The notes beneath the pieces are model-generated. The model made no database searches. It was not told where the DNA came from and worked only from the letters and a program-made list of their open reading frames with translations. From positions 172,431-236,430 of IMG/VR virus record IMGVR_UViG_2162886007_000107: 64,000 bases of DNA; one strand, written 5' to 3'. Made by a program: the position numbers and the translations under genes. Shown here one piece after another: positions 21,894-41,262 of the stretch (its first letter is position 1; each line of letters begins with the position of its first letter).

Positions 21894-22517
21894 ATGAATC
21901 TGCAAGACATTGTGAACGCAACTCTCCTCGGCACTTTCCAAGGTAACCGTGAGGAATTTGCTCTCGACTGCTTTAAGAAGTACGAAGTTGAAGAACCGGC
22001 CTTGTTTCTCAAGAAGCACGTCTCTGTCAACCAGTGGTGGGTTCTTTGGTACATGGCAAAGAACGACGTAGACCGCTTCAAAGCAGCCATGGCCATCATG
22101 CCCCGTTGTAAGGAACTGGCTGCCGATCCAAAAGCCTTTCACTGGTTGCGTCGCCATTGCCAACAGCGTCTGGCTCTTCGTAACCGGATCAAACGCCAGT
22201 ACCAAGCACTGAAAGAAGGGGGTTCTGGCATACCGCTAGATGACATGGTGGAAAATGCGCTTGGGGAACGCATGACCAAGAAAGATAACTTTGAAACAGA
22301 AATCATCTTCCAGGCCGATCTGGTTCCTAAGCATCGTTTCAAGCTTACGGACATGCATGGAGGCAAAGGCGTGATCGTTAAGGTTATCCCTAATGATCAA
22401 CTCCCGAAAGACCGCAATGGCAAGGTTGCGGACATTACCCTCCACGACTACCCGTCTTCTCCGTTCCGTCGTCCTGAAGGCGACAGCTGGATTAGCAATC
22501 TTCCCCGCAAGAAATAA
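21894..22517 (+). CDS. NPxW-family protein fused to an RNA polymerase beta-like fragment
   Basis: VNQWWVLWYM in the N-terminal half; C-terminal FKLTDMHGGKGVIVKVIPNDQLPKDRNGKVADI. Confidence 0.7.
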   Translation: MNLQDIVNATLLGTFQGNREEFALDCFKKYEVEEPALFLKKHVSVNQWWVLWYMAKNDVDRFKAAMAIMPRCKELAADPKAFHWLRRHCQQRLALRNRIKRQYQALKEGGSGIPLDDMVENALGERMTKKDNFETEIIFQADLVPKHRFKLTDMHGGKGVIVKVIPNDQLPKDRNGKVADITLHDYPSSPFRRPEGDSWISNLPRKK

Positions 22518-22569
22518 AAACGCTGTAACCTTACAAACTGTTGGCTACATTTCTTATTAGGAGTTTCAC

Positions 22570-23001
22570 ATGTTCAAGAAAGTAATCTTGGTAGTAGCGC
22601 TGTTCCCTACTCTGGCTTTTGCTGCATTGTCTAACAATCGTGTCATCGACAGTGCTCCGGTGTTGAACTCGTTTACTTGCCAGAAATACACCGACAATGA
22701 ACTGAGCATGGAACAAGGATATCTGACCGATAACCCGGCGACCGATCTGGTCTTCAATATCGATCAGACCAAATACGAGTTCATCGTTAAGAAGAACGAT
22801 CTACTCAAGAAAGATATTCGCCTCACCATTCCTGAAGGCGGAAACATCAGTGGCATGTCTGGCAATGCCCACGAAATGATGTTCAAGCGAATCGACGGTG
22901 ATGACAAGCCGTATTTCGTTATCTACTTCACCAACTCCGATCCAAAGTCGGATGGTGGTATCAATCGCGCGGTATTCATCGCCAAGTGCGACAAGGGTTA
23001 A
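22570..23001 (+). CDS. putative exported/periplasmic protein
   Basis: AGGAG RBS; signal peptide MFKKVILVVALFPTLAFA; two Cys. Confidence 0.75.
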   Translation: MFKKVILVVALFPTLAFAALSNNRVIDSAPVLNSFTCQKYTDNELSMEQGYLTDNPATDLVFNIDQTKYEFIVKKNDLLKKDIRLTIPEGGNISGMSGNAHEMMFKRIDGDDKPYFVIYFTNSDPKSDGGINRAVFIAKCDKG

Positions 23002-23004
23002 GTC

Positions 23005-24156
23005 ATGAACTTTATTACCGATACTGATCCAAGCCAAACGTTTTCAATTGTTACCACTATCAATGGTAGCGCCCAAGACATCCAGCGTTGCAACCTGGAC
23101 CTGATCCCACTCGTTGAACATCTGCTCGACGGGTTCCGTGAAGAAACCTCCCTCCGCCACTTCGTGGATGTGCAGGATCGTTTCTTTGTTGCGATCGAGA
23201 ACTCCACCGGTTTGGCGGTCGCATTGCTGGTGTTGACGAAGGAGACTGTAAAGTTTCTTTACGTACACAAGCCTTACCGTCGCCAGGGCCTGGCCACCAA
23301 ACTGTACAAGGAAGCAGTCGAGTATGGTGAAAAACAACCATACTTTGTTTTCATGTACAACCCTGTGGTAAAGGAGGCCGGGAAGTTCTTGACCTCTATC
23401 GGCGCGCTGGATGCCTTTTTGCAAGATTCAGCAGAAGGTGTGTCAGGCGGGAAAGTTCTCGTCCATACCCGTCGTGTCTATCTGAAGCCTGGCGGCTTAC
23501 ATCAACCAAAACACAAGCCTTGGGAGTTGCACGGTCTTCCGGTTAATGTGCATTTGGAGTTTTCTAGCCAGACTACAACTAACCTGAACGTCAAAACCCA
23601 GCTGGCAGAAATGATCAAGCTGTTGAAAGAAGAGGTCGGTGACACTGAAGCTACCACTGAACAAAATTATATTTTGGCAGTGGAGTACCCGAGCAATACT
23701 CCGATCGGTTTCCTTACAGCAGAACAGTCTTTTGCCTGCCGACGGTTAACCGGTGTTTGGATCAAGCCGGAATATCGTCGTAAGAACATTGCAACTGTTT
23801 TGGTTGCAACTCTTATTTCGTATGGCACCCTGGACGACGCCACCATGGCTGCTGTCGGTGTAAACAATTTGGCAGCTCGTGAGTTCTTTGGGTATGTTGG
23901 ATTTGAGCCCACCAATCTCAGTCCAAATAAACAAGAACAGTTTTACAGAATGACCAATGGGGATCTGAAACGCCAAGAGTACCTTTGTAAAGATCGTCAA
24001 ACAATCATCGACTCCAAGAGCTACGTGTATTGGGACGGTCCTGAAGAAGTAACTCTTGACGGCAGTTACAACCTGACTGAACTGAAGGCGCTTGTTCGTT
24101 TCATCGAGAACGGTGGTCCTGGTAAGGGTCACAAGAAACACGAAGAAATCTTTTAA
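23005..24156 (+). CDS. tandem GNAT acetyltransferase (two domains)
   Basis: Motif A twice: LYVHKPYRRQGLA and VWIKPEYRRKNIA. Confidence 0.8.
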   Translation: MNFITDTDPSQTFSIVTTINGSAQDIQRCNLDLIPLVEHLLDGFREETSLRHFVDVQDRFFVAIENSTGLAVALLVLTKETVKFLYVHKPYRRQGLATKLYKEAVEYGEKQPYFVFMYNPVVKEAGKFLTSIGALDAFLQDSAEGVSGGKVLVHTRRVYLKPGGLHQPKHKPWELHGLPVNVHLEFSSQTTTNLNVKTQLAEMIKLLKEEVGDTEATTEQNYILAVEYPSNTPIGFLTAEQSFACRRLTGVWIKPEYRRKNIATVLVATLISYGTLDDATMAAVGVNNLAAREFFGYVGFEPTNLSPNKQEQFYRMTNGDLKRQEYLCKDRQTIIDSKSYVYWDGPEEVTLDGSYNLTELKALVRFIENGGPGKGHKKHEEIF

Positions 24157-24166
24157 TAAACCTTAA

Positions 24167-24196
24167 TAGCAGAGTACCCCTAGGGGTACTCTGTTT
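24167..24196 (+). terminator. hairpin nearly identical to 4411-4440
   Basis: TAGCAGAGTACCCC-TA-GGGGTACTCTG. Confidence 0.65.
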
Positions 24197-24215
24197 CACT
24201 TTGAGAGTATTTTTT

Positions 24216-24911
24216 ATGAACGGCGAAATCCCTAAAGACTATCTGGCTATTCCTTTGCAAGAAGGTCGTACTGTTCGCAGTATCAACGTTGCTGTTATCC
24301 AAAAGGATTTCGGTGACATGCTCAAAGAGCAGCGTTATACCAACATGCATCATGCTCTTGTTTCTTTGTTTGTAATGCGTAATCAAGAAGTAGCTCCGAG
24401 CAATGAAGTTTTTGTTATTAGCGCGCTGGAGCATTACATCAAACACACCACCCACATTTATTTGGCTTTGACCGAAGAGAATGTGGTTATCGGCTATGCC
24501 TTGGCCGATAAAGCTTACGTACATGACATTTTTGTCGCAAAAGAATATCGTCGTGATCGCATCGGCATTAGCCTGGTCAACATGATCATGCACAAAAACC
24601 AGGAAGCCGAATACGTCAACTTCCTCAGCAAACGGGAAAAGAAAGAGCCTTGCGAAAGTTACTTCTTCAGTAAGCTTGAGGCCAGTCACCCGCACTGTGG
24701 ATACAACAACGATCATTTCAAGCATTCGCATCAAGTGGTTAACCAGGTCGCTCGTCGGGAAAAGGCCCGCAAAGAAATCACCGGACGTTTGGCTGTATTG
24801 GCTGCAGATTACGAGGTTGTCCAAGGTAAGGTTAAACTGGATGGCCTATTTAGTGTCAAACAATTGCACCTGCTCGCTGAATTGGCCGAGCTTGAAGAAG
24901 GAACGCGTTAA
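24216..24911 (+). CDS. GNAT acetyltransferase
   Basis: VIGYA...DIFVAKEYRRDRIG. Confidence 0.75.
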   Translation: MNGEIPKDYLAIPLQEGRTVRSINVAVIQKDFGDMLKEQRYTNMHHALVSLFVMRNQEVAPSNEVFVISALEHYIKHTTHIYLALTEENVVIGYALADKAYVHDIFVAKEYRRDRIGISLVNMIMHKNQEAEYVNFLSKREKKEPCESYFFSKLEASHPHCGYNNDHFKHSHQVVNQVARREKARKEITGRLAVLAADYEVVQGKVKLDGLFSVKQLHLLAELAELEEGTR

Positions 24912-25549
24912 TGGAATTTAAACACTTCAAACGAATTAAAGATCTGGTCGATGGTGAACTAGCTTTCTCCAATGGGTGGATGGATTATCGTCAGAAGCTA
25001 ATGTGCTTTGTAACTCGGCATGATGGTCTGGATCCGATTGAAGATCACCAATATGCTACAAACTATTTTGGTCAACTAATCCGTGGTTACGATATCAAAG
25101 ACGTCGTAATTGCTCTGGACGATAACGACGAGATCATCGGGTTTATCTGGGGCGACAATGGCGACATTGGTTTGGTGAAGGTTCCCCTAGCTTTGCGTCG
25201 TAAGCAGATCGCTACCAAAATGCTTAAACTGTATTTGGAGAAGACCGAGCCAAAAGCCGGTAAGTACGAATACTACTCTCACTGGTTCCATGAAGATGTA
25301 GGCCTGGCCAAGCTTTTTCTTGCACAAGGGTTTACTATCACCAGTATCCATGATGTCCAGTCGCCCACGCTGACTCGCATCATTGCAACCAAAGCAGCTC
25401 CTGATGATTTTCATGAGAAGCGTTTGGATGCTGCTGATCGTGGATATGTTGACTTCCGTGAGGATTATGCGGTGGTTGATGGTCATTACACGTTGGATCA
25501 ACTGGAGTCTCTGCTCGTGCTTGCACGTAAGGAACTGAAAGGTGGTTAA
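24911..25549 (+). CDS. GNAT acetyltransferase
   Basis: IIGFI...LVKVPLALRRKQIATKML...FLAQGF. Confidence 0.7.
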   Translation: MEFKHFKRIKDLVDGELAFSNGWMDYRQKLMCFVTRHDGLDPIEDHQYATNYFGQLIRGYDIKDVVIALDDNDEIIGFIWGDNGDIGLVKVPLALRRKQIATKMLKLYLEKTEPKAGKYEYYSHWFHEDVGLAKLFLAQGFTITSIHDVQSPTLTRIIATKAAPDDFHEKRLDAADRGYVDFREDYAVVDGHYTLDQLESLLVLARKELKGG

Positions 25550-26075
25550 GAATAACCAGTGGTTGGGTTCGTATTACAAAGTTCGGATGTTTCACAAGGA
25601 CGCTCTGTGTGAACGCACAAAGCAATTACTTTGTAATGCGTGGAATGACCTTACCAAACACGAAATGCGTCTGGTACTGCGTCACGAAGCCATTGCAAAG
25701 GTCTTTGAGCAACATGTCGGGGAACATACTTCATTTGGTCGTGATTCAGAGAAGTTCCATGCTTATTTGGCAGATGTGGAGTGGGTTTACATTATTGAAC
25801 GGATAGGTGTTCCTGGTGTCAGTGCTTTCATGGCTGTTACCAAGGATCAACAAATCCTTTCTCTATTTGTGGCTCCTCCATACCGCGGGAAGAAGCTAGG
25901 GACGTATCTGGTAAACAACCATCTGGAGATCTTCGGCAAGCCGGTGTCGTTGCAGTGCTTTAAGTTTAATGAACTAGCTTTAAAGTTCTACTCGTTCATT
26001 GGCTTCAAAGCCAGCTATGTGGCTAGCCGTGAAAATAATGGTGATCTGTATGACACACTGGTTCGTATGGTTTAA
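25542..26075 (+). CDS. GNAT acetyltransferase
   Basis: LFVAPPYRGKKLG...NELALKFYSFIGF; start could be ATG 25587. Confidence 0.8.
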   Translation: MVKNNQWLGSYYKVRMFHKDALCERTKQLLCNAWNDLTKHEMRLVLRHEAIAKVFEQHVGEHTSFGRDSEKFHAYLADVEWVYIIERIGVPGVSAFMAVTKDQQILSLFVAPPYRGKKLGTYLVNNHLEIFGKPVSLQCFKFNELALKFYSFIGFKASYVASRENNGDLYDTLVRMV

Positions 26076-26117
26076 CTTCTAGGCGGTCTTAAGCCTATAT
26101 TACTCCGGTGTATCAAT
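26071..26117 (+). promoter_or_regulatory. phiKZ-type early promoter
   Basis: TTTAACTTCTAGG-N11-CTATATTACTCCGGTGTATCAATG; core at 26096-26103. Confidence 0.8.
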
Positions 26118-26161
26118 GGAAAAAAGACATTCGGTCTGACTGATACATCGGAGTTTTCGAC

Positions 26162-26374
26162 ATGCTCTATCGACTGCAAATTTTGGCTTTACTGATGGTC
26201 CCCTTGTGCCTGTTTCTCGCAGGCTGCTGGCTCATCATCTGGGCTGCTAAACGGTATTACCCTGACTGCAAAGAGCGTCAGGTTTCCATCGCCATCATTC
26301 ACGGTGGTGTGGTCTTAGGCACATTTGGGCTTATGGGTCAAATCATGTATCACTTGCATGATCTTGATATGTAA
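26162..26374 (+). CDS. small two-TM membrane protein
   Basis: GGAG RBS; two hydrophobic segments. Confidence 0.65.
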   Translation: MLYRLQILALLMVPLCLFLAGCWLIIWAAKRYYPDCKERQVSIAIIHGGVVLGTFGLMGQIMYHLHDLDM

Positions 26375-26416
26375 GCAGTAAACCAAACGTCGAAGATTCT
26401 GGTGGAACAGTTTTAC

Positions 26417-26448
26417 CGTATGCACTGGAACAGCTATCAGTGCATACG
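26417..26448 (+). other. perfect 11-bp intergenic hairpin
   Basis: CGTATGCACTG/CAGTGCATACG with a 10-nt loop. Confidence 0.6.
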
Positions 26449-26500
26449 TTTACCTTTATTACTAACGGCTAGCTATTTCGGCAGCCAAAGGAGATTTACC

Positions 26501-27091
26501 ATGACTCAACTTTTCTCTGATCGTAAATTCGTAGACACTTTCTCCACTCGCAATGTAGTGTTTGAAAGCTACGCCGGTTTCGACAAAGCAGGTGACTTGG
26601 TTCTGCGCACCTGCATGGAGTTCGCTCACAACGGCCGTATCAAACGCACCAAGGTCATCAAGACCGAAGGCATGAGCGTCCACGCTATCCACACCGCCGT
26701 TGGTGAGTATCAGGCTGAAGTCCTGGACATCATCAACGTTCTGGAAGACTACTGCTCCTGGGTCCGTTCTGGCAAGGTAGAAGTCTTCTCGGAATTCATC
26801 GGCACCGATGATAGCCCGCTGTATTTCCACGGCCACTGCACCAAAGGCTACCCATCCCTGTTCATCTTCGGTCAGGAACTGCACAGCCTAGAACTGTACG
26901 GCAAAGGCACTCTGAAATCTCAGGGCGAGAAAGTCCCTTACATCGAGCGTATCGAATCGCTCGCTGAGTGCTATCGTGAACACCTGAAATCGCTGGATGC
27001 CGTTCCGGCTAATGCTTTTAAAGGTGGTTACGTAGAACGTGTTTCCAAAGGTTCGGTAATTTCCATTGAACAGTATGCAACCGCACGATAA
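26501..27091 (+). CDS. hypothetical protein
   Basis: AAGGAG RBS; strong codon bias. Confidence 0.8.
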   Translation: MTQLFSDRKFVDTFSTRNVVFESYAGFDKAGDLVLRTCMEFAHNGRIKRTKVIKTEGMSVHAIHTAVGEYQAEVLDIINVLEDYCSWVRSGKVEVFSEFIGTDDSPLYFHGHCTKGYPSLFIFGQELHSLELYGKGTLKSQGEKVPYIERIESLAECYREHLKSLDAVPANAFKGGYVERVSKGSVISIEQYATAR

Positions 27092-27103
27092 GGAAAAGCT
27101 TTA

Positions 27104-27571
27104 ATGAACAAGGTGTTCGCAGTAATTGTTTTTGCTTTGGCTGGTAATGCATTTGCCGGTAGTGCTAACACAATCACTTGTGCTCAGTACGGTTATACCA
27201 ACAACCCTGACAACTTTGCTGATATACCGGTTGCTGCAAAGCAATCGGTATTTAAGGTTAACGACCTTACCGTATCGTTGGATGGGAAAGTTTACAAAGT
27301 GATCGATCCAGAAATGGTCGGTCTGGAAGGCCTCGCTGTCGTTTACAAAGACAGTAAAAATAACCAACTCCTCTATCTTTATATGAACGATAATGGGGAG
27401 AAGGAAATCGGGGTTTCCAATATACCGGAAGATTCTGATACTTTCTTCGGAGATAAAGGTGTGTACAAGCAGTGCACACTTACCGAGGATAAAGAGGATG
27501 CTTCTACCGAATCGGTACTTAGAACTGCGGGAGGAAGAGTTTCGACTACTCTCCCGGTTTACAGTTTTTAA
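27104..27571 (+). CDS. putative exported/periplasmic protein
   Basis: Signal peptide MNKVFAVIVFALAGNAFA; two Cys. Confidence 0.75.
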   Translation: MNKVFAVIVFALAGNAFAGSANTITCAQYGYTNNPDNFADIPVAAKQSVFKVNDLTVSLDGKVYKVIDPEMVGLEGLAVVYKDSKNNQLLYLYMNDNGEKEIGVSNIPEDSDTFFGDKGVYKQCTLTEDKEDASTESVLRTAGGRVSTTLPVYSF

Positions 27572-27572
27572 A

Positions 27573-27722
27573 GTGAAAGTCATTAAGGGAGCCGGAGCAG
27601 TTATTGCTTGCGGTTCTCTTAATTTTTTTATTAAGTCTGGTCAAAATAACTTAAAGGTTGGCGAGAGTTTGAAGTTCCAAGGTGGACTACTCGTACCTAA
27701 AGACCAAGGGTTGTGGATATAG
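27573..27722 (+). CDS. possible small protein (49 aa)
   Basis: GTG-start ORF filling the gap; weak RBS. Confidence 0.3.
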   Translation: MKVIKGAGAVIACGSLNFFIKSGQNNLKVGESLKFQGGLLVPKDQGLWI

Positions 27723-27731
27723 GAGCTTGTA

Positions 27732-28202: not shown

Positions 28203-28588
28203 GTGAAGTAGTCGAAAAAGAAGAAGTAAAAGAAGTCGACATTATCAAGGATTTTGTTGACTACGTCTTTGACACGACCAACATCTTTGATCGTGAGAAG
28301 TTTTTGGGTGGTCGTAACGTGACTGGTAATGCTTTCGGTAAAGAAGCTAACCTGCGTTACCAGTACTGCTCTGGTGGTTACTACGCCGAAGGTTGGGCTG
28401 GCAATATCAAGTTCCGTATCTACGGCTTGACCAGTCGTACTGTTACAACCTGGCGTTATCACGTCTGTCCGATTGATGACCAGATCAATGAAGAAGACAA
28501 TGAGTTCTGCTTCATCGGCCGGCGTAAAGAAATGTTGTTGGATGAACTCAAACGTCACGTCCTGGAAGACATCTGTCCGGACATTTAA
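28199..28588 (+). CDS. hypothetical protein
   Basis: ATGA overlap; GAGG RBS. Confidence 0.7.
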   Translation: MSEVVEKEEVKEVDIIKDFVDYVFDTTNIFDREKFLGGRNVTGNAFGKEANLRYQYCSGGYYAEGWAGNIKFRIYGLTSRTVTTWRYHVCPIDDQINEEDNEFCFIGRRKEMLLDELKRHVLEDICPDI

Positions 28589-28600
28589 AGGAATAGCGTT

Positions 28601-30572: not shown

Positions 30573-32210
30573 GTGATGTCTGATAACACTTTGCAATTTA
30601 TCACTCTCGATGAAACCAAACGTCTGGCCGAAGATGTGGTCAATGACGTCGAGCGTGCCGTTGTCGCGACCATGGGTCCGAACGGTCGCTTGTCCGTAAT
30701 TACTGTGGGCACTACACCTAAAGTAACCAAAGACGGTGTAACCGTAGCAAAAGGTCTGAAGTTCAACGATCCACGCAAGGAACTGATCAACAAGATCATT
30801 ACCGAACCGGCGATCAAAACCGACGAAGAATGTGGTGATGGCACCACCACTACCATCATGTTGATGGCACAGTTCTTCCGTGTGTATCGGGCCTTCCCAA
30901 GCTACCGTCAGCACGCGTTCATCGATGAAGTTACCAAAGCCTGGATCGAAGAACTGCGTCGCCTGAGCATCCAGCTGGAAGTGGATGATCCACGTCTGAT
31001 GCAAATGGCTCTGACCTCTTCGAACAACGATGCGGAAATGAGTCGTATCGTAGTAGATCTGTACCGTGGCAGTAAGGAACACTTCCCATCGATCGAACTG
31101 GTTTACGGCGTGGAAGATACCGACCGTGTGATTCACACCGACGGTCTGCGCATGAACATGGAACTGAGCAATCCTCAGTATGCAGGTAACACTGCCGGCA
31201 CCCTGACTCTGGATAATTACATCCCAGTTCTGGTAGATGGTTTCATCAAACCAGAAAACGTTCAGGAGCTGATTAAGTTCTGTGGTGAGATGACCAATCT
31301 GCATGGTGACTCTCCAGTTACTGTTGTGATCATTGCTCGTGCGCTGGAAACCCAGATCGATGGTGCCATCCTGAAACTGAATGCTCAGTTGAGACAGGCT
31401 GGCAAGAAGATCAGTTTCGCTGGTGTACGTACCAACCTGGGTGGTTCTCTGGGTAGCAACATCATGCAGGACATGGCGTGCATGCTGAACTCCAGCATGG
31501 TCAGTGATCTGGATCAAGCTTGCAGTGTTACGTGGGAAGTCAACAATGACCAGTTGACCATCACCAACAACAAAGCAATCCTGATCCCAACTGAGAAAGC
31601 TGCCACTCGTATCGAAGAACGCGTGGAAGAAATCCGCAAGGTCCTCGAAAACTACGATGCTCGTACTCGTTGGAGTCGTCGTGCTCGTTTCGACGAAGAT
31701 CGTCTGCGTAACCTGACTGGTGAAGTTGTCAACCTGTGGGTTGGTGGTGAAACTCAGTCGGAAGTCAAAGAACGTCATGCACGTTTTGAAGACGTTATCA
31801 AAGCGGTCAAGAGCGGTCTGGTTAACGGCATCCTTCCAGGTTGCGGTATCAGCCTGATCGAGAGCCTGGAAGTAGCAGGGGCCAAGTTCCTGAAAGAAGA
31901 AATGTCTGAAGAAGACCGTAGCTTCAAAACCGAAATCATCGGTGCACTGGTAGAAGTTTCTCGTCACCAGTACAAGTACCTGATGGAAAAGGTTTCCGAT
32001 GTTTACATGCAACGGAACGAAGAAGGTCGTCTGATGGTAACCAACCTGGCCACTGGCGAAAATGGTTCTCCAGAATCGTTGGGTGTGTTCGACACTGCTT
32101 ATGCGTCGATCACTGCGCTGAAGGGCGGTTCTCAAACTGCCAAGATCGTAGCGACCCTCGACTCGGTAATCATCAGTGACAAACTGACAACTGTGGCCGT
32201 ACAAGGCTAA
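30573..32210 (+). CDS. phage GroEL-like chaperonin (EL gp146 / OBP gp246 type)
   Basis: TMGPNG, TKDGVTVAK, EECGDGTTT, VGGETQSEVKER..RFED, GILPGCG, DTAYASITALKG. Confidence 0.95.
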   Translation: MMSDNTLQFITLDETKRLAEDVVNDVERAVVATMGPNGRLSVITVGTTPKVTKDGVTVAKGLKFNDPRKELINKIITEPAIKTDEECGDGTTTTIMLMAQFFRVYRAFPSYRQHAFIDEVTKAWIEELRRLSIQLEVDDPRLMQMALTSSNNDAEMSRIVVDLYRGSKEHFPSIELVYGVEDTDRVIHTDGLRMNMELSNPQYAGNTAGTLTLDNYIPVLVDGFIKPENVQELIKFCGEMTNLHGDSPVTVVIIARALETQIDGAILKLNAQLRQAGKKISFAGVRTNLGGSLGSNIMQDMACMLNSSMVSDLDQACSVTWEVNNDQLTITNNKAILIPTEKAATRIEERVEEIRKVLENYDARTRWSRRARFDEDRLRNLTGEVVNLWVGGETQSEVKERHARFEDVIKAVKSGLVNGILPGCGISLIESLEVAGAKFLKEEMSEEDRSFKTEIIGALVEVSRHQYKYLMEKVSDVYMQRNEEGRLMVTNLATGENGSPESLGVFDTAYASITALKGGSQTAKIVATLDSVIISDKLTTVAVQG

Positions 32211-34404: not shown

Positions 34405-34409
34405 GACTG

Positions 34410-34446: not shown

Positions 34447-34464
34447 ACACGAGGAGAATGGTAA

Positions 34465-36837
34465 ATGTCTGAGCATGAATTTTTGGGTCACGGTGGTCAA
34501 GTGATGATGCGTAAAAACCTCACGGTTATTTTGACTGTTCGTGATGAAAGTTCCATGGGTCCCTTCAGTGAAAGTGAAGCGAAGGATCTGGCTGATTCGT
34601 TTAAAGTACTGGGGACGATGAAACAAGAAGAAGGTGTCTTTACCTTCGACATGGGCAAGTATGCTCGTGCAACGGATCACAAGCGCATCACTGAAGTGTT
34701 GGAAGCTTACTCCGTACGTCATCAGCGTCGAATGGTTTTCACCATGCGTTCGTCGGATGGTGAACTCGACGTCGCCAAGATCCTTCTAGAAAACAAGGAG
34801 GTCGATTCTGTCAGCATGATGGATCCTCGGCCACCTGAACTGAAGCCTGCTTCAGAAACGGTGGAAAGCACTGGCTTCATCGACGGCGTCTGGATTGCTG
34901 GTCGTAACAAAGCGGTTGCTGTTTATCTGATTGTTCCGGAAAGCCAAGACGTGTCTCTGAATTCGGAAGAGTTGATGGACGCCAACTTCATGGATTTCAA
35001 ACGGATCGATTCTCACCAGTTGTTCCTTACCTATCGTCGTTTGCAGGAAACTGCTTTCAATGATATCAAGCAACGAGTGGAATTGTTTAACCGGGGTACC
35101 GGCAATGTCGTTGTGGCCGACGTGAAGGTTCTCACTGCTGAAGAGATCGACTCTATTAATGAGAAGATTGCTCAGCGTGAAGCAATGCTGGAACGTGATC
35201 CTTTGCCAAAGGTGAATACATCCGTCCCCATGCCTCCTGTAAAGCCGCCTAAGCTCGAACTGGTTACTCGGGCTGCAGTACACCCAGATATGTTCAATCT
35301 TGACGTGAGCGTGATGCAGCGTGTCACAACAAAGGTTCTTGATGTAACCATCGGTGCTGATCGACCTTGGGGATCCGAATATCTGGCTACTGCAATTGAA
35401 ATGGAAGCTTGGCGTTTGGTCGCCCAAACCTTTCGTTCCATCCGTCAGCATCGATCTGCCACTCGTGTGCACAACAGCTTTACCGGCACTGGGATAATCA
35501 TGCTGGATGACTGCTGTGATGATCCGCACAAAATGCTGGAGACTCTTGACAAGATCAACAAAGAGTTTCCATGCAACATGCAGGTGAAGTTGTACGATCC
35601 GAACCTTATTCCGGTGAAGCCGATCGAACCTGGCGTTCGCATCATGAAGAACCACAAGGACATCAGTAACTATCGAGTGATGGCTCGTGTTACTGTAAAC
35701 GGTTTGGAAAAGTCAGAACGTGAGTTCTTCCAGCTGTTGTGTGCCGCTATGAACGGTACAGTTGTTTCGGCCAATGATTTTGAAATCGATTTGGGTGAAG
35801 CTCCTGATGAGTACACTTTGCGGGCTATTGTTGCCGGACTTATCCGAGTCAGCGATCTGCAAACAGGTAACGCGACCTACGACTACCGCTTCTACAAGAA
35901 GCATGTCTCTGATGGTACTGTTATCAAAGACGCAGTAACGTTCGACGAGGGCAAGAAAGTAGTACAGGCGACTATCCATGGTGAAATGACTACTGACATT
36001 GTTCAGAAGTTCAGTAAAGCCTTTCCTGTTACTGGTTCCTGGCTCAACTCCAATACCTTCCAGGTAGAGTGTGGTGAGCACGAAACTCCGTTTGAAGTGG
36101 CAGTTGCTTTGAACACCATGGTCAATGAAGTAAACAATGAGCGGCCTAAGGGATTCATCTCCCGCTTCTTGAGCAACCGTAATCCTCTGCGTCCACCACC
36201 ACGTCCTGGTAGCGCAGAACAAAAACGTCAGTCTGCTGTATGGGGGGCTGTGAACCAAAACTTCAACAACAATCTTGACGGAGCCATCTACGAACTGGAA
36301 AGGCAGATCGAAGAACGTCCACTGGAGAACATTCCAAAAGACGAACTGGCCAATGATCCTGCGATCAAAGCTCTGGGTGCTTTACGTTACACCAAGGCTG
36401 CTGCACGTAAACGAGTCATCAAAACTCGTCTGTGGCGATTCTTCATCGTTGCTCTGCTGATTGCTATCGGTGGTGCAATTTACCAATACAACGAGTACCT
36501 GTTTGACCGTGGTTATGCTACCTCGGTTCTGGATTGTTCGGTGCCTTATGGTAGCGATCGTTTAACCGGTAAACGCTACGTAACTAGCGAATACCGTTCT
36601 CTGTTTGGCGTACGTCTTTCCTTCGATAGCAATATCAAGGATGTGACGAAACTGGATCTGCCGAATGACAACATTATTCTGTTGGGTATCAACCCGAAGA
36701 ATAACAAGCCATGGCGAATGAATTTCGGTAAAGGTGAACAAGGCGCTCAGCCTTTGCAACCAACCGAGCAATACTGGTTCGTGGGTAACAAAGATGCCGC
36801 GACCGTTTCTTACTCCAACTTCTGCACTAAGGGCTAA
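34465..36837 (+). CDS. large membrane-anchored hypothetical protein
   Basis: 790 aa; GAGGAG RBS; single TM near residue 655 (FFIVALLIAIGGAIY). Confidence 0.8.
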   Translation: MSEHEFLGHGGQVMMRKNLTVILTVRDESSMGPFSESEAKDLADSFKVLGTMKQEEGVFTFDMGKYARATDHKRITEVLEAYSVRHQRRMVFTMRSSDGELDVAKILLENKEVDSVSMMDPRPPELKPASETVESTGFIDGVWIAGRNKAVAVYLIVPESQDVSLNSEELMDANFMDFKRIDSHQLFLTYRRLQETAFNDIKQRVELFNRGTGNVVVADVKVLTAEEIDSINEKIAQREAMLERDPLPKVNTSVPMPPVKPPKLELVTRAAVHPDMFNLDVSVMQRVTTKVLDVTIGADRPWGSEYLATAIEMEAWRLVAQTFRSIRQHRSATRVHNSFTGTGIIMLDDCCDDPHKMLETLDKINKEFPCNMQVKLYDPNLIPVKPIEPGVRIMKNHKDISNYRVMARVTVNGLEKSEREFFQLLCAAMNGTVVSANDFEIDLGEAPDEYTLRAIVAGLIRVSDLQTGNATYDYRFYKKHVSDGTVIKDAVTFDEGKKVVQATIHGEMTTDIVQKFSKAFPVTGSWLNSNTFQVECGEHETPFEVAVALNTMVNEVNNERPKGFISRFLSNRNPLRPPPRPGSAEQKRQSAVWGAVNQNFNNNLDGAIYELERQIEERPLENIPKDELANDPAIKALGALRYTKAAARKRVIKTRLWRFFIVALLIAIGGAIYQYNEYLFDRGYATSVLDCSVPYGSDRLTGKRYVTSEYRSLFGVRLSFDSNIKDVTKLDLPNDNIILLGINPKNNKPWRMNFGKGEQGAQPLQPTEQYWFVGNKDAATVSYSNFCTKG

Positions 36838-36840
36838 ATC

Positions 36841-37611
36841 ATGAAATCTGTAAAAGCAGTTATTGTTGTTGATGCAATGCAATTTCCTGATCCTCTCTCC
36901 GGCCAGCACGGACCCATTGATTGCATGCAGTTCAAAGGTAACCCTCTCTGCACGCCGGTCGGCAAATTGCGTGTCTCAATGAGCCGTCCCCCAATCAACA
37001 TGATGCAGGGTCAGATGCACATGTATCAGGCTCAACATCATGGAGTTGATGCGTATCTGAGCATGCACAACCCAGGTATGTGGATGACCAAAGAAGGTCA
37101 ATTCTCTTTCAACTGTGTCGACGGCAATGCACTAACGGCAACCCTTCCACAGTTGCTGGAAAAGCTCAAAGAAAATCTGGGAGGTGGGGATGACGTAGAG
37201 ATCATTAACGCTCATCTCCATAACCCAGGCACCCTGATGCATCTGGCCGGTATCCCTCGTTACGACGTTCGTTTTGAAACGATACTGGGTCAAGCAGTCA
37301 AGATCGCTGCTTTTGACGAGCACGACTGGGGTGTTCTGGATTTGGCGACCCGGAACTGGTACGGGGTCAATCTGAAACGGCACGTGCCAGGTGTCTTCAC
37401 CATTGAAGAAGGGGCAAAGGATATCACCTTGCACATGGCCAACGTCAATGACATTGTGTGTCGTTTTAACAAGGCGGGGCATCTCGTCAATGTTTTCTAC
37501 AAAGACACTGAAGAGCCCGTGGAGTCCTTGCACCTGAACGTCAACAACCCATTCCTCGACCTCATCGAGTCTGATGGCGTCGCAATTACCACCACCACCG
37601 AACAAGAATAA
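36841..37611 (+). CDS. hypothetical protein
   Basis: 256 aa; operon packing. Confidence 0.75.
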   Translation: MKSVKAVIVVDAMQFPDPLSGQHGPIDCMQFKGNPLCTPVGKLRVSMSRPPINMMQGQMHMYQAQHHGVDAYLSMHNPGMWMTKEGQFSFNCVDGNALTATLPQLLEKLKENLGGGDDVEIINAHLHNPGTLMHLAGIPRYDVRFETILGQAVKIAAFDEHDWGVLDLATRNWYGVNLKRHVPGVFTIEEGAKDITLHMANVNDIVCRFNKAGHLVNVFYKDTEEPVESLHLNVNNPFLDLIESDGVAITTTTEQE

Positions 37612-37620
37612 CCTGGCGAT

Positions 37621-37646
37621 AGCCCTGGAGTGACGCCCAGGGCTTT
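37621..37646 (+). terminator. hairpin
   Basis: AGCCCTGG/CCAGGGCT stem. Confidence 0.45.
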
Positions 37647-37651
37647 AAGGA

Positions 37652-38146
37652 ATGACCATGAAAGAGCATTATGGGGCGGAGATTAAACAGCTTTTCGATC
37701 GGATCTATTTGATCGATGGGGATAAGCACTCTTTCTTTTATCACAAGAAAGATTTCCGAGTGCTCGGGCCAGATGATGTGGTTAGTGTTTACGATCTCGA
37801 ACATGTGACTCGTATCAACACTGGGCTGACTGATCAGCGTGCTCTTAACTACATTGTCGTGTTGGGGGATGATGAGTTCCAGTTCGTATTCATCAGCAAC
37901 AAGGTTAGTACTTGTGTTGTCCTGTTTTCTATCTTCAGTCCACAGGGCCACAAGATCATTCTGGATCAGGGAGTGTCTGAACCGATTCTGGGTCTTAGTT
38001 CGTTAGTGAACGTGACCGGTGAAAAGGTTAAGGCAGGGATGGGTAACTGGTCGCATATTCATGGGTATGCTTCTAAACTGTTGGCGGTTCATTGTGATCC
38101 CAGCAGGCCGTCTATTGTTAAGTCTATTTATCGTGATGGAGTATGA
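37652..38146 (+). CDS. hypothetical protein
   Basis: AAGGA RBS. Confidence 0.7.
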   Translation: MTMKEHYGAEIKQLFDRIYLIDGDKHSFFYHKKDFRVLGPDDVVSVYDLEHVTRINTGLTDQRALNYIVVLGDDEFQFVFISNKVSTCVVLFSIFSPQGHKIILDQGVSEPILGLSSLVNVTGEKVKAGMGNWSHIHGYASKLLAVHCDPSRPSIVKSIYRDGV

Positions 38147-38149
38147 TTC

Positions 38150-38608
38150 ATGCAAGAAGTCGTCGAAACACCAGACACCGAGGAAATGCTGAAACTTTGC
38201 ACAGCTCGTCCGTTTGTTAACCGCCTTACAGGTCTGCCGGTCTCTCCTAAAGAAGCCGACAAGCTCGGTCACATCGAAGGCCGACACACTCTGCGTCTGA
38301 TCGCACCATGCATTCCAACCTATCTGAAAAAGAAGGTTGTGTTCCTTGCAGTGTTCCAGGCGAAGAACTCCAAGTTCACTGTAATGAGCGATGGTCTCAT
38401 TACTTTGTACATTTACCTGGGTGCTCCTGAAGATGGGTATACGACAATGCGTATGCGCATTCGTGCCGGTTCTCGGGATGTAGAAGAAGCTCGTTATTTC
38501 TTCCTCAACAGACCAAGCATTTCGTCTCCGGCAATTGTGTCGTTGATGCGTAACAAGATGAAAGACATCGAAGAGATCCCTCTCTTGTATAGTTTTTCTG
38601 AACTGTAA
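38150..38608 (+). CDS. hypothetical protein
   Basis: GGAG RBS; 152 aa. Confidence 0.7.
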   Translation: MQEVVETPDTEEMLKLCTARPFVNRLTGLPVSPKEADKLGHIEGRHTLRLIAPCIPTYLKKKVVFLAVFQAKNSKFTVMSDGLITLYIYLGAPEDGYTTMRMRIRAGSRDVEEARYFFLNRPSISSPAIVSLMRNKMKDIEEIPLLYSFSEL

Positions 38609-38663
38609 CCACCATTCTTATTGGGGCAATTCGCCCTTTGACTTTCTTTAAGGAGAAATTCGC

Positions 38664-39245
38664 ATGTTGACTAAAGCCTTTGAGTTGAAAAAAGAATTCC
38701 CGTTTCCCTTCCGTGGCGGCAAGCTGCTGTTGGACAAACGCACGTTGGTGCCTACCAACCTTAACGTTGCTGTAGCCATCAACAATGATCTGGTTTACAC
38801 TTTGAAACCAGACTTGAAAGGCGAGATCACTCTGTACGGTATCACCTACGGTAACCAAGGGTTGCCTATGGTTGTCATGAGTGACGGTCATCACACCCGT
38901 TACTACTGGTTCAGTCGCAAACGCCATTACACCTACCTGGTCGAAAGCGGTAGCAATGATCTGGACGAAGCCTGGCTGAACCTGTTCAAATCCATCGTCA
39001 CCAACACTCGGTCGAAAGTGATCGACATGTACGAGATCATGCGGACATTCATTCGTGAATACTTCTGGACTCTCGGTGACAAGGAACTGCACCTTACATT
39101 GTCGACGAAACACAACGATGAATTGTTGTACATCGAAGTGGCCAAAGAACACGGCATGCGTCGGGCGATGTTCATTACTGTCAATGGCAAGAACCGGTTG
39201 GTAGATTTCAGCAAGCATCCATTGCTGGAAGTATTGGAGGCCTAA
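38664..39245 (+). CDS. hypothetical protein
   Basis: AAGGAG RBS; 193 aa. Confidence 0.75.
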   Translation: MLTKAFELKKEFPFPFRGGKLLLDKRTLVPTNLNVAVAINNDLVYTLKPDLKGEITLYGITYGNQGLPMVVMSDGHHTRYYWFSRKRHYTYLVESGSNDLDEAWLNLFKSIVTNTRSKVIDMYEIMRTFIREYFWTLGDKELHLTLSTKHNDELLYIEVAKEHGMRRAMFITVNGKNRLVDFSKHPLLEVLEA

Positions 39246-39299
39246 GGGCTTTGACAGGGGTGGATTGTTCCGCCCCTTTTCTTATTTGAGGGATTAAAC

Positions 39300-40634
39300 G
39301 TGTCTAAGAAACAAACTCCGTTGCAGGTTCCATACAGCGTGGCTAAAGCCTTGTTAGCAGTTCACCTCGCAGGAAAAGGGGTGGATGTACACAGTAAAGA
39401 TTTCGATAAAGAATACGGTCCGTCTATCATGAAGCTTTACGGTACGGATGAGCCGCCGGTCAACATGGATCACCTGGTCCGTCCTGATCTGAATGACGAA
39501 CAGTTCGACGAACTCATCCGCCAAAGTCGTAGCCTGCGCATGTGGGACAAGCTAAGGGAGATTAACGATAAGTCTCCTACCGGCACGGCGTACATGATGT
39601 ATACCGATGCAAACGGTCACCCTACCTGTGCTGGCAGGAATTGCGGCGAGTGCGCTTCTTGCTACGACAAGGAGCTTTCTTTTAATCCGGTAATCGTTGG
39701 GGGCAACATGGGACCTGTTGATTACTTGAATGGTCTGCACATGAGCGGTTCCGGCAAGACTGGGTTGCTTTCAGCATTCCACAGTGCCAAGCACATTCCG
39801 GACAATATCCCCTTGACCAGTCTGTGCAGAACCGGTGGCTTCCGTCGTGGTGAGTTTGCGACGATAAGCTCCCTTGGTTTCGGTCGTTTTGACAAGCCGA
39901 CTACCAGCCATATCGCCAATCTGGTTCGTTCCATGATTGACAAGAAACCTTTGTGGCACATTAGCCTGGAGAACACTCCTCGCGGGTTTGCCTATGACTT
40001 TGAAATGGATGTCCATACCCCATCACATCCGATAACGAAGATGGCAATGTGGGGTAACGGTCCTCTTCGGGCTTATCGCTCGCGTCCTGGTAATCCTCAT
40101 CGTCCTACTCTTTATCCGGAGCAGATATTCAATCTGAAGGAACTGGAAAGCAAATCCTACATCTCAGTTACCTATTACGGTGACATCGAAGTAGGTGGTA
40201 AAAAGGTTCCAGGCGTTAAAGGTGTTCCTGCAACACCACGCAATGGGTATCACGAATACTTTTACGCAGATAGCTTGTCCGACAGGACTCTTTATCGTAA
40301 GCATTATTACGCGCGTAATGGTGTTTCTGGTATGCATGGTCTGGACGCCGATTATTACGGCGAAAGCATGTTGCTCCGCCCTATCGGTCCACGTGACAGC
40401 CTGGGGTACCCGGTGCGTGAAGACTGGGCTGAAGAAGCCATCGACAAAATGATCTGGTTGCAGTTGAACAAAGATCACATCCCGCTGACTTTTGACCCGA
40501 CGTATGGTCATGTCCGAAGCATCACCAACATCGGTAAGCCTAAAGCTACCTGGCAAACCCGTCATATCAAAGAAACAGCGCGCGAGCGTCTGCGTCAAGC
40601 CACCTCGCCAGGGAAGGATAAGCGTGGGTATTGA
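39300..40634 (+). CDS. mosaic hypothetical protein with Cys cluster and degenerate DnaB-like segment
   Basis: CAGRNCGECASC; GGFRRGEF...KKPLWHISLEN. Confidence 0.7.
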   Translation: MSKKQTPLQVPYSVAKALLAVHLAGKGVDVHSKDFDKEYGPSIMKLYGTDEPPVNMDHLVRPDLNDEQFDELIRQSRSLRMWDKLREINDKSPTGTAYMMYTDANGHPTCAGRNCGECASCYDKELSFNPVIVGGNMGPVDYLNGLHMSGSGKTGLLSAFHSAKHIPDNIPLTSLCRTGGFRRGEFATISSLGFGRFDKPTTSHIANLVRSMIDKKPLWHISLENTPRGFAYDFEMDVHTPSHPITKMAMWGNGPLRAYRSRPGNPHRPTLYPEQIFNLKELESKSYISVTYYGDIEVGGKKVPGVKGVPATPRNGYHEYFYADSLSDRTLYRKHYYARNGVSGMHGLDADYYGESMLLRPIGPRDSLGYPVREDWAEEAIDKMIWLQLNKDHIPLTFDPTYGHVRSITNIGKPKATWQTRHIKETARERLRQATSPGKDKRGY

Positions 40635-41262
40635 TTATTACGTACAAGACTTAGAGAACGGGGGGTACAAGTTGGACAGACGAATTGATGGAAATGCACA
40701 GCGTGTGTTTGATCACTCTTCGCGTTTTAGTTTTGCTGCGCGTCATGACGTGGGTTGGCCTTATCCACAGAGTCGTCTCATGCGAGACCTCAAATTCATG
40801 AAAGTCTTTGGTGGTTTCCAGAAATGTGAGACACCAATTACAGAAGGTTCTAATCCCTTCATACGCGTGGTCTACGTGCCTAAGCTTGCTCCGCTTATGG
40901 TGCTGGACAGAAAGATGTGTATCACTGTAGCCGGTCACAAGGTCTATGTTGGTTGGATTGCCCGTTTAGGCCAGAACATGTGGCGGGATATTTCCAACAG
41001 CATTAAGTCAGTGCATCACGCGATCAGAAACTTGGATAAAGATGGTTACCCACGAGATCCGGTTAATCGTAATACTGATCGTGCTGAATGGGTGGAGAAG
41101 GCCATGTACCAAATGGGGTTCTCTCGTTCCAACTACAAACCAACGTTTCAAGAACGGTTTCCATACGTCAACGTAGGAACCATCGGTCACCGGGATCATC
41201 CAAAAGCGTTGACCCCAAACACTATTAAAGCAACTATTAAGGAATTTCTGCATGACTTCTAA
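40624..41262 (+). CDS. hypothetical protein ending in an EF-Tu G1-like motif
   Basis: AAGGA RBS with GTG 40624; [23 protein letters not shown]. Confidence 0.7.
   Translation: [212 protein letters not shown]

What the first reader, a model, noticed from the sequence alone, without database searches (positions are those of the whole stretch)
21894..41262. Candidate system: most-conserved motifs of transcription, replication and translation machines embedded as short tags in accessory proteins
Seen: three independent ORFs each carry a 20-60-aa piece of the signature nucleotide-binding motif of a core machine: RNAP beta (22290), DnaB (39831) and EF-Tu (41146). The latter two are in adjacent genes. 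In the DnaB and EF-Tu pieces the P-loop is broken, and all three are too short to fold into active enzymes. Random gene-fragment capture would not be expected to favour the hallmark motifs. Known: some bacterial immune sensors and effectors recognise conserved core proteins. Inference: a 'motif decoy' strategy. The alternative is that conserved motifs are simply the pieces I can recognise among many captured fragments.
Basis: inference. Interest (0 to 1): 0.8.

Follow-up and report, generated by a model that had tools for sequence, protein, structure and literature searches.

The report
Core-enzyme look-alike tags in phage proteins
Two small jumbo-phage protein families really do carry short, long-conserved copies of the RNA polymerase beta active-site loop and of the first 25-35 residues of EF-Tu, but the DnaB piece is not real, the three do not form one system, and what the two tags do is unknown.

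Summary
The window is the last 64 kb of a ~236-kb phiKZ-like jumbo phage from soil and rhizosphere metagenomes. Two of the three motif pieces are real.

**RNAP beta piece (real).** ORF1 (21894-22517) has a helical N-terminal part. Its residues 126-193 are homologous to the DPBB active-site loop of phage non-virion RNAP beta (phiKZ gp71-73 residues 361-420, E 1.5e-9; profile E 8e-14). The source is the phage polymerase, not host RpoB. A deeply diverged relative keeps a shorter ORF in which this loop is the only clearly conserved part.

**EF-Tu piece (real).** ORF3 (true start 40624, 212 aa) belongs to a phage-only family of about 16 clusters. Its conserved C-terminal module ends in a copy of EF-Tu residues ~3-25(36). 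Eleven of 17 members hit the EF-Tu N-terminus as their best match (z 5.6-10).

**DnaB piece (not real).** ORF2 against DnaB gives z 0.7. The motif GGFRRGEF is a family motif, and ORF2 is a diverged tandem paralogue of ORF3 with a decayed tail.

All three ORFs are under purifying selection (dN/dS 0.14-0.20). Nothing links ORF1 to ORF2/3. No known EF-Tu-directed defence touches the copied segment. The most likely role is a non-catalytic interaction or mimicry module, but this is untested.

The parts
21894..22517 (+). ORF1, 207 aa. Lineage-restricted chimeric protein: helical N-terminal part (aa 1-129) followed by an RNAP-beta-derived segment.
   Evidence: The only same-length homologue is P0009 (72% identity); dN/dS is 0.20.
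22269..22472 (+). RNAP beta DPBB active-site loop copy (ORF1 aa 126-193). It includes K150 and K158, which match phiKZ gp71-73 K386 and K394. It spans the HGG|KGV intron-insertion hot spot of chimallivirus nvRNAP beta genes.
39300..40634 (+). ORF2, 444 aa. Diverged long-form paralogue of the ORF3 family.
   Evidence: colinear with P0004 and P0010; dN/dS 0.147.
39834..39857 (+). It is a family-specific motif with no demonstrable DnaB homology.
40491..40544 (+). Decayed counterpart of the EF-Tu-like tail in ORF2 (aa 398-415).
   Evidence: Alignment A3.
40624..41262 (+). ORF3, 212 aa, GTG start. It overlaps the end of ORF2 by 11 nt. Short-form member of a chimallivirus-specific family.
41053..41136 (+). 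Conserved family module upstream of the tag (DPV.R....EWVEKAM..MG.SRSNY).
   Evidence: Alignment A2. Invariant or nearly invariant positions: P146, W156, V157, M161, P173.
41137..41250 (+). EF-Tu N-terminus look-alike (ORF3 aa 172-209, matching EF-Tu residues 3-36: N-terminal tail, strand beta1, P-loop, start of helix 1). The P-loop is degenerate here.
   Evidence: AF2 predicts aa 183-194 at pLDDT below 50.
41252..42052 (+). Downstream 266-aa ORF. Its start overlaps the ORF3 stop, and it is syntenic in the relatives L003 and L007. Function unknown, and it shows no GTPase features.
30573..32210 (+). Phage GroEL-like chaperonin, a conserved upstream neighbour (6-8 kb) of the family in every related contig examined.

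Best explanation
This is not one system. It is two unrelated, genuinely homologous core-enzyme tags plus one false positive.

**ORF1.** ORF1 is a rare chimeric accessory protein. Its C-terminal ~70 residues descend from a partial copy of the phage non-virion RNAP beta subunit. The copied part is the DPBB active-site loop with the two conserved lysines.

**ORF2 and ORF3.** These are tandem paralogues of a chimallivirus-only family. The family's ancestral C-terminal module ends in a copy of the first ~25-35 residues of bacterial EF-Tu (N-terminal tail, strand beta1, P-loop). ORF3 keeps the tag with a broken P-loop. In ORF2 it has decayed almost beyond recognition.

**Shown.** Neither tag can be an enzyme. 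Both are kept by purifying selection and are among the best-conserved parts of their families.

**Inferred (about 40% likely).** The tags work as non-catalytic interaction or mimicry modules. Under this reading:
- The ORF1 loop would bind what that loop binds in the polymerase (the beta'-like DPBB, a gp68-like subunit, or the template/RNA). It would thereby modulate or poison assembly of a phage RNAP, the phage's own or a co-infecting relative's.
- The EF-Tu tag is predicted to be flexible and exposed. It would engage a factor that reads the EF-Tu N-terminal or P-loop sequence. The family conserves the EF-Tu-specific side chains (H19, D21 in GH.D.G). It does not conserve the Walker-A Lys/Thr that phosphate binding would need.
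For: **Homology of ORF1 to phage RNAP beta.**. The two DPBB lysines are named in PMC8287921.

**ORF1 family retained across deep divergence.** L013 comes from a relative whose GroEL is only 42% identical. It has a 146-aa ORF in which only the beta-like core aligns (51% identity), and it sits at a different genomic position.

**EF-Tu tag.**

**Paralogy of ORF2 and ORF3.**

**Purifying selection.** dN/dS is 0.20, 0.147 and 0.144 for ORF1, ORF2 and ORF3.

**Tag exposure.** The tag is predicted disordered or exposed and the core has no known fold.

**Context.** The neighbourhood is accessory or anti-defence: Acb1-like, ART-like and several GNAT genes.
Against: - No partner has been identified, and no co-fold or experiment was possible.
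- Both AF2 models are of low confidence (pLDDT 67 and 53).
- The tag was lost or decayed in 6 of 17 family members and in ORF2.
- In the window's own sub-lineage the tag is no more constrained than the rest of ORF3: pN is 0.18 against 0.13. Its G23 and K24 equivalents have changed.
- In folded EF-Tu strand beta1 is buried, so mimicry could only concern unfolded or nascent EF-Tu, or the P-loop surface.
- The ORF1 family has only three known members. Its close relative P0009 has lost three nearly invariant beta residues.
- The phage's own full-length beta gene was not located, so a trans-supplied polymerase segment is excluded only indirectly.
Confidence: 0.45

Rival explanations
1. One reading: a coordinated 'motif decoy' strategy. 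Tags copied from core machines would divert bacterial immune sensors or effectors that recognise conserved core proteins.
For: - The tags are non-enzymatic and selectively retained.
- The region also holds an Acb1-like anti-CBASS gene and other accessory genes.
- EF-Tu is a known target or cofactor of defences: Lit, type IV Thoeris caspase and Avs7.
Against: - Only two tags are real, and they are unlinked. The two adjacent genes are paralogues.
- The RNAP tag copies a phage protein, not a host one.
- Known EF-Tu-directed defences act at R45, R59 or G59-I60, or on domains II/III, not on residues 3-36.
- No further core-gene fragments appear among the 77 other ORFs.
Confidence: 0.1
2. Relics. 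Both tags would be leftovers of old partial gene captures or duplications. They would be recognisable only because the source motif is extremely conserved. The selective value of the proteins would lie elsewhere, in the ORF1 helical domain and in the ORF3 N-terminal beta/alpha core plus the EWVEKAM helix.
For: - The tag was lost or decayed in 6 of 17 members and in ORF2.
- The P-loop is broken in the window's copy.
- The tail is not more constrained than the rest in the window-versus-L007 pair.
- P0009 has mutated conserved beta residues.
- The tags are disordered in the AF2 models.
Against: - The tag is the best-conserved block in most of the ORF3 family, even though the rest is only 30-40% identical.
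- In the ORF1 family, the beta-like core is the only part still alignable with L013.
- A neutral 20-35-residue stretch would not keep 13 of 15 identities to EF-Tu across such divergence, as it does in P0010.
Confidence: 0.25
3. The ORF1 fragment would be a by-product or a player of intron and homing-endonuclease warfare. It is centred on the HGG|KGV site where many chimallivirus nvRNAP beta genes carry a group I intron. It could therefore be a relic of ectopic homing or co-conversion, or a second target site.
For: - Twenty-five protein clusters of ~390-420 aa are exon-1 products ending at ...TD.HGG, including phiKZ gp71.
- The ORF1 fragment spans ~27 aa upstream and ~39 aa downstream of that site.
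- Its 54 nt around the site are as similar to beta genes as those genes are to each other: mean 0.63, maximum 0.85.
- ORF1 sits between two genes that are adjacent in L013, so the gene has moved.
- Intron endonucleases in chimallivirus RNAP genes act as weapons between phages (PMC12908238).
Against: - The window holds no intron, endonuclease gene or Rfam group I intron.
- The fragment is at most 49% identical to any sampled beta, so the copy is old.
- Both the intron site and the detectable homology are expected to centre on the most conserved motif, so the coincidence may carry no information.
- The whole ORF is under purifying selection as a protein.
Confidence: 0.1
4. The EF-Tu-like tail would be a minimal phosphate-binding (strand plus P-loop) element that the family uses to bind a nucleotide or nucleic acid. 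It would not be a mimic.
For: Some members keep a formally intact G-x4-G-K-[ST] motif (P0017, GHIDFGKS) or near-intact versions (P0007, P0011, P0014).
Against: - Lys is replaced by Arg in several members, and the Ser/Thr position is not conserved.
- The EF-Tu-specific H19 and D21 are conserved instead.
- No other G-domain element follows. Pfam GTP_EFTU reaches at best 13.5 bits against a cut-off of 26.5, covering profile positions 3-19 of 188.
- The window's own copy has Pro at the second Gly.
Confidence: 0.1

Closest known systems
phiKZ non-virion RNA polymerase beta subunit gp71-73 (PDB 7OGP chain C; PHROG 3295; Pfam RNA_pol_Rpb2_6)
   Same: ORF1 aa 126-193 align to gp71-73 residues 361-420. 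This is the DPBB loop FK.TD.HGGKGV...MP.D..G..AD with both conserved lysines.
   Different: Only ~70 of ~700 residues are present. The rest of ORF1 and its neighbouring ORFs show no beta homology. The Pfam score is 13.9 bits against a cut-off of 23.4. It cannot form a polymerase subunit.
Bacterial elongation factor Tu, N-terminal residues 1-36 (the region of the elf18 peptide plus the P-loop)
   Same: The family consensus ..F.ERFP.VNVGT[IV]GH.D.G[KR] matches EF-Tu [20 protein letters not shown] without gaps. P0010 shares 13 of 15 residues.
   Different: - The tag lies at the C-terminus of an unrelated phage protein.
- There are no G2-G5 motifs and no domains II or III.
- The Walker-A Ser/Thr, and often the Lys, are not conserved.
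- It scores below the Pfam GTP_EFTU threshold.
Group I intron and HNH endonuclease insertions in chimallivirus RNAP genes (phiKZ gp71/gp72/gp73; PhiPA3 intron endonuclease, Birkholz et al. 2024, as reviewed in PMC12908238)
   Same: The ORF1 fragment is centred on the same HGG|KGV position that these introns occupy.
   Different: ORF1 has no intron or endonuclease. It is a contiguous, translated and selected coding sequence at an ectopic locus.
Phage proteins that mimic host macromolecules or sequester defence signals (for example the Acb1, Tad and Acb2 classes of anti-defence proteins)
   Same: Small, phage-specific accessory proteins in a region that also encodes an Acb1-like protein. The tags are possible mimics.
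   Different: There is no sequence or fold relationship to any known anti-defence family. The function is untested.

Membership tests
Translational GTPase / GTP_EFTU (PF00009) | Reaches the Pfam gathering score over the G domain | tested here: not met
   ORF3 has no hit. The best family member, P0007, scores 13.5 bits against 26.5, covering only profile positions 3-19 of 188.
Translational GTPase / GTP_EFTU (PF00009) | Intact Walker A G-x4-G-K-[ST] together with the G2-G5 motifs | tested here: not met
   The window's copy reads GHRDHPKA. No EF-Tu-like sequence follows in any frame.
EF-Tu N-terminal segment (homology of the tag only) | Significant, position-specific similarity to EF-Tu residues ~1-36 | tested here: met
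   PDB E 0.0037. Eleven of 17 members score z 5.6-10 against shuffles, always at EF-Tu residues 1-36. The family profile retrieves true EF-Tu N-termini.
DnaB-type replicative helicase / RecA-like P-loop ATPase | Detectable similarity to DnaB around Walker A | tested here: not met
   No PDB hit at E <= 10. No tblastn hit at that site at E <= 50. Smith-Waterman z is 0.7 for the whole protein and -0.55 for the motif region. No Pfam family.
Multisubunit RNAP beta subunit (RNA_pol_Rpb2_6, PHROG 3295) | Full beta C-terminal module (~700 aa in chimalliviruses) reaching the family threshold | tested here: not met
   Pfam scores 13.9 bits against 23.4. Homology is limited to aa 126-193, matching beta 367-432. 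Flanking ORFs are unrelated.
Multisubunit RNAP beta subunit (homology of the fragment only) | Significant similarity to the DPBB loop with its conserved lysines | tested here: met
   E 1.5e-9, 5.6e-15 and 7.8e-14. K150 and K158 align with gp71-73 K386 and K394.
Group I intron / homing endonuclease element | Intron RNA or endonuclease ORF at the locus | tested here: not met
   The window has no Rfam family at gathering score. Pfam and PHROG scans of the ORFs found no HNH or GIY-YIG endonuclease.
   Lit cleaves at G59-I60, the type IV Thoeris caspase at R45 and R59, and Avs7 binds domains II/III. The tag covers residues 3-36.
   This needs infection assays. No cultured relative was found.

The most novel reading that the evidence does not exclude
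Nucleus-forming jumbo phages would maintain small accessory proteins whose functional core is a peptide-sized copy of the most conserved segment of a core machine. The EF-Tu N-terminal/P-loop peptide and the RNAP beta DPBB loop would be exposed mimics. They would compete for, or recruit, the cellular or viral factors that normally read those segments. Candidates are a chaperone, a modifying enzyme or an exchange factor acting on EF-Tu, and the beta'-like partner of a rival phage's polymerase. This would be a new mode of host takeover or of interference between phages.
Probability: 0.15. Interest if true: 0.8.

Novelty: new variant of a known kind. Interest (0 to 1): 0.5.

Why it matters
If the tags are functional mimics, they would show viruses copying short linear segments of the most conserved cellular and viral enzymes, rather than whole domains, to interfere with them. 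They would also point to an unknown factor that reads the EF-Tu N-terminus or P-loop sequence.

The ORF1 case bears on competition between co-infecting jumbo phages, whose RNAP genes are already known battlegrounds for intron endonucleases.

If the tags are relics, the result is still a caution. Signature motifs are the last part of a captured gene fragment to fade. Motif-spotting in raw sequence will therefore over-report 'tags', and will also throw up false ones such as the DnaB piece here.

Tried and rejected
**Chance resemblance for the EF-Tu piece: rejected.** The tag is conserved across the family and passes shuffle tests.

**DnaB homology: rejected**.

**ORF1 and its four neighbours as a decayed or multiply split beta gene.** Their lengths sum to ~728 aa, close to a beta subunit. 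Rejected because the neighbours show no profile similarity to beta.

**Remains of a GTPase downstream of the EF-Tu tag, or in other frames.** None found. The downstream 266-aa ORF has no family hit.

**Nucleotide-level rather than protein-level conservation of the EF-Tu tag.** Rejected: pS is 0.72 in that stretch between the window and L007.

**Fold recognition.**
- The ORF3 model has no match in PDB or BFVD.
- The ORF2 Atlas model is unusable, with pLDDT 0.29.
- The ORF1 model has low confidence.

**Relatives in cultured phages.** There is no DNA match and no tblastn match for ORF2 or ORF3.

**Locating the phage's own nvRNAP beta gene.** Two IMG/VR scans did not return the window's contig, so I gave up on this.

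**More ORF1-like genes in IMG/VR.** Only the window's own contig and L013 turned up.

**Scan with the full ORF3-family alignment.** It failed because the alignment had no sufficiently conserved stretch.

**Literature search for the EF-Tu peptide in phage proteins.** Nothing relevant.

**The DHH phosphoesterase piece at the window start.** It looked like another fragment but is simply a gene cut by the window edge.


Full report
**What the window is**

The sequence is phage DNA with no close cultured relative: megablast against 50,697 phage records found nothing.

Its content points to a phiKZ-like (chimallivirus-type) jumbo phage:
- a GroEL-like chaperonin at 30573-32210 (Pfam 1.3e-19; PHROG 5725, 9e-118);
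- an array of PHROG 1062 virion-protein paralogues on the minus strand at 48-56 kb;
- a 1193-aa tail-fibre protein.

The same proteins occur on a contig of 236,564 bp. IMG/VR holds the genome as a 236,430-bp contig, on which the window is the last 64 kb. Near-identical DNA is found in soil, rhizosphere, indoor and plant metagenomes. The window holds no tRNA and no Rfam family.

**ORF1 (21894-22517, 207 aa): a real piece of RNAP beta, from the phage enzyme**

Residues 125-184 match phiKZ non-virion RNAP beta gp71-73 (PDB 7OGP chain C, residues 361-420) at E 1.5e-9. Bacterial RpoB (E. coli 1065-1100) scores only 0.03. PHROG 3295, 'RNA polymerase beta subunit', scores 5.6e-15.

I built a profile of 94 chimallivirus beta sequences. 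It aligns ORF1 aa 126-193 to beta 367-432 with probability 98% and E 7.8e-14. The four flanking small ORFs show no similarity to beta. That rules out my idea that the five ORFs, which sum to ~728 aa, are a decayed or multiply split beta gene.

The copied segment is the beta double-psi beta-barrel loop. ORF1 K150 and K158 align with gp71-73 K386 and K394, the two conserved lysines named in the phiKZ nvRNAP structure paper (PMC8287921). The fragment is at most 49% identical to any of ~115 sampled beta proteins, so the copy is old.

**ORF1 is a real gene, and its family is rare**

Its one same-length homologue among 5.8 billion proteins is P0009 (72% identity, same synteny). dN/dS is 0.20 overall and about 0.36 within the beta-like part.

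A much more distant relative is IMG/VR contig L013, whose GroEL is only 42% identical. It has a 146-aa ORF whose C-terminus carries the same loop (…FKLTDMHGDRGV…), and that loop is the only part that still aligns by tblastn (51% identity). In L013 the homologues of ORF1's two neighbours are adjacent, and the ORF1-like gene lies 3.5 kb away. The gene has therefore moved. Two IMG/VR scans found no further members.

AlphaFold2 gives a helical N-terminal part (aa 1-129). The beta-like segment is largely unstructured on its own, and the mean pLDDT is 53.

**A coincidence at the intron site**

In the beta search, 25 protein clusters of ~390-420 aa, including phiKZ gp71 itself, are exon-1 products that all end at '…TD.HGG'. 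HGG|KGV is therefore a recurrent group I intron insertion site, and it lies in the middle of ORF1's fragment.

Intron endonucleases in chimallivirus RNAP genes are known weapons between co-infecting phages (PMC12908238). At the DNA level, ORF1's 54 nt around the site are as similar to beta genes as those genes are to one another: mean 0.63, maximum 0.85.

Both the intron site and the limit of detectable homology are expected to centre on the most conserved motif. No intron or endonuclease is present in the window. I therefore treat this as a lead, not a finding.

**ORF3 (true extent 40624-41262, 212 aa): a real and ancient EF-Tu N-terminal tag**

The ORF as listed starts at 40492. The database protein P0001 and its orthologue both start at the GTG at 40624, overlapping ORF2 by 11 nt.

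Residues 172-209 align to E. coli EF-Tu residues 3-36 (PDB phmmer E 0.0037; tblastn E 0.001). With ~90 ORFs in the window, that score alone is borderline.

Conservation settles it:
- A word-indexed search gave 7 homologues, and a full profile search of 1.84 billion representatives gave 16 family members.
- The only other hits in that whole library were genuine EF-Tu N-terminal fragments, matched through profile positions 172-206 (E 9e-8 to 3e-4).
- In the 17-sequence alignment, the family signature is a C-terminal module: DPVPRN..REEWVEKAMW.MGMSRSNY.PTF.ERFP.VNVGT[IV]GH.D.G[KR].
- Eleven of 17 members each have the EF-Tu N-terminus (residues 1-36) as their best local alignment to the whole of EF-Tu. 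Their z-scores are 5.6-10 and 0 of 500 shuffles reach the score.
- The other six keep the 'KPTF.ERFPH' lead-in but have lost the rest, so the tag is ancestral and was lost secondarily.
- P0010 shares 13 of 15 residues with EF-Tu [15 protein letters not shown].

**What the EF-Tu tag is not**

Nothing downstream, in any frame, resembles the rest of EF-Tu. Pfam GTP_EFTU reaches at best 13.5 bits against a cut-off of 26.5, over profile positions 3-19 only.

The family conserves the EF-Tu-specific H19 and D21. The Walker-A Lys is often Arg and the Ser/Thr position is not conserved. This argues against phosphate binding and for recognition of the EF-Tu sequence as such.

Conservation is at the protein level, not the nucleotide level: pS is 0.72 in this stretch against the closest relative.

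AlphaFold2 (17 sequences, pLDDT 67) gives a beta-sheet-plus-helix core and leaves aa 183-194 below pLDDT 50. The tag is therefore predicted to be flexible. No fold match was found in PDB or BFVD. The Atlas language-model neighbours of ORF3 are short GTP_EFTU fragments in 92 of 100 cases, at a weak score of 0.68.

**ORF2 (39300-40634, 444 aa): no DnaB piece, but a paralogue of ORF3**
- phmmer against PDB finds no DnaB at E <= 10.
- tblastn with E. coli DnaB finds nothing at this position at E <= 50.
- The Smith-Waterman score is ordinary. For the whole protein z is 0.7, and 116 of 500 shuffles do as well. For the motif region z is -0.55.

P0004 is a 348-aa single-gene form that combines an ORF2-like N-terminus with an ORF3-like C-terminus.

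ORF2, its orthologues and the long-form members P0004 and P0010 align colinearly through VRPDLNDEQF, GGFRRGEF, the EW[AV]E[EK]A helix and the tail. ORF2's 'FDPTYGHVRSITNIGKPK' is the decayed counterpart of the EF-Tu tag.

The two 'adjacent genes with two different motifs' are therefore one family, duplicated in tandem, with one real tag. ORF2 and ORF3 are under purifying selection, with dN/dS 0.147 and 0.144. The locus is syntenic with GroEL 6-8 kb upstream in every related contig examined. RNA-library contigs from a plant metagenome lie on ORF2, ORF3 and the next gene at low depth. This is weak evidence for transcription at best.

**Is it a system?**

I scanned the 77 other predicted ORFs of the window. 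Only accessory functions appeared: GNATs, an Acb1-like protein, weak ART and HD matches, and a DHH phosphoesterase cut by the window edge. No further core-machine fragment scored at Pfam E <= 0.05.

ORF1 and ORF2/3 are 17 kb apart and unrelated. Their spreads also differ: three known members against about 16 clusters.

The known EF-Tu-directed defences act outside the copied segment:
- Lit cleaves at G59-I60.
- The type IV Thoeris caspase cleaves at R45 and R59.
- Avs7 binds domains II/III.

The 'motif decoy system' is therefore not supported as stated.

The two real tags are not neutral debris. They are selectively retained and are among the best-conserved parts of their proteins over deep divergence.

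**Most likely mechanism**

Shown: homology, non-enzymatic nature, retention and paralogy.

Inferred, at roughly 40%: the tags are interaction or mimicry modules.
- The ORF1 loop would bind the partners of the beta DPBB loop and modulate or poison a phage RNAP.
- The EF-Tu tag would be an exposed peptide read by a factor that recognises the EF-Tu N-terminus or P-loop. In folded EF-Tu strand beta1 is buried, so that factor would have to act on nascent or unfolded EF-Tu, or on the P-loop surface.

Rivals are relics (about 25%), immune decoys (about 10%), an intron-homing origin for ORF1 (about 10%) and a minimal P-loop (about 10%).

Not done: the phage's own nvRNAP beta gene was not located. No co-folding or experiment was possible.

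Noticed in passing
window 2738-3178 (+): A 146-aa ORF matches Pfam Acb1, the anti-CBASS 2H phosphodiesterase, above its gathering score (32.6 bits against 27, E 8e-8). It probably also accounts for the 'RNA ligase' PHROG 755 hit.
   Followed up: partly
window 23005-26075 (+); locus L006 1934-5005: There is a cluster of GNAT acetyltransferase genes directly downstream of ORF1, including a 383-aa protein with two GNAT domains. The close relative L006 has the same region as four or five separate GNAT genes.
   Followed up: no
many beta proteins (P0060, P0086, P0088 and others); phiKZ gp71: The nvRNAP beta gene of many chimalliviruses is interrupted at exactly the same place, after ...TD.HGG and before KGV. 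Twenty-five protein clusters of ~390-420 aa end there, marking a recurrent intron insertion hot spot in the catalytic loop.
   Followed up: partly
window 21514-23001 compared with L013 1831-2528 and 5674-6114: The homologues of the two genes flanking ORF1 are adjacent in the distant relative L013, and the ORF1-like gene lies 3.5 kb away. The ORF1-type gene has been inserted or moved.
   Followed up: partly
window 48199-56516 (-): There is an array of at least seven paralogous genes of the PHROG 1062/16120/21620 'virion structural protein' group next to the 1193-aa tail-fibre gene at 56587-60168.
   Followed up: no
window 10543-11136 (+) and 19587-20186 (+): Two sub-threshold matches appeared: ADP-ribosyltransferase ART-PolyVal (23.1 bits against 31.2) and the HD domain (19.6 bits against 22).
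   Followed up: no
window 3-401 (+): The C-terminal DHHA1 part of a DHH phosphoesterase (PHROG 4771, 3.8e-18) is present. The frame is open to the first base, so this gene is cut by the window edge and is not a captured fragment.
   Followed up: yes
window 40624-40634 and 41252-41262: ORF2/ORF3 and ORF3/next ORF overlap by 11 nt each (GTG start inside the ORF2 end; ATG inside the ORF3 end). This arrangement is typical of translationally coupled genes and is conserved in L003 and L007.
   Followed up: no
P0021, P0022, P0023, P0025: Public protein sets contain predicted proteins with tandemly duplicated EF-Tu N-termini. These are probably assembly or gene-call artefacts at tuf loci. They were the only non-family hits of the ORF3-family profile.
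   Followed up: no
ESM Atlas clusters: Several Atlas clusters hold small proteins of 129-184 aa that carry only an RNA_pol_Rpb2_6 piece; for two of the top three, the few members with a taxon record are mostly viral. These may be exons of intron-split beta genes, or further ORF1-like chimeras. I did not resolve which.
   Followed up: no
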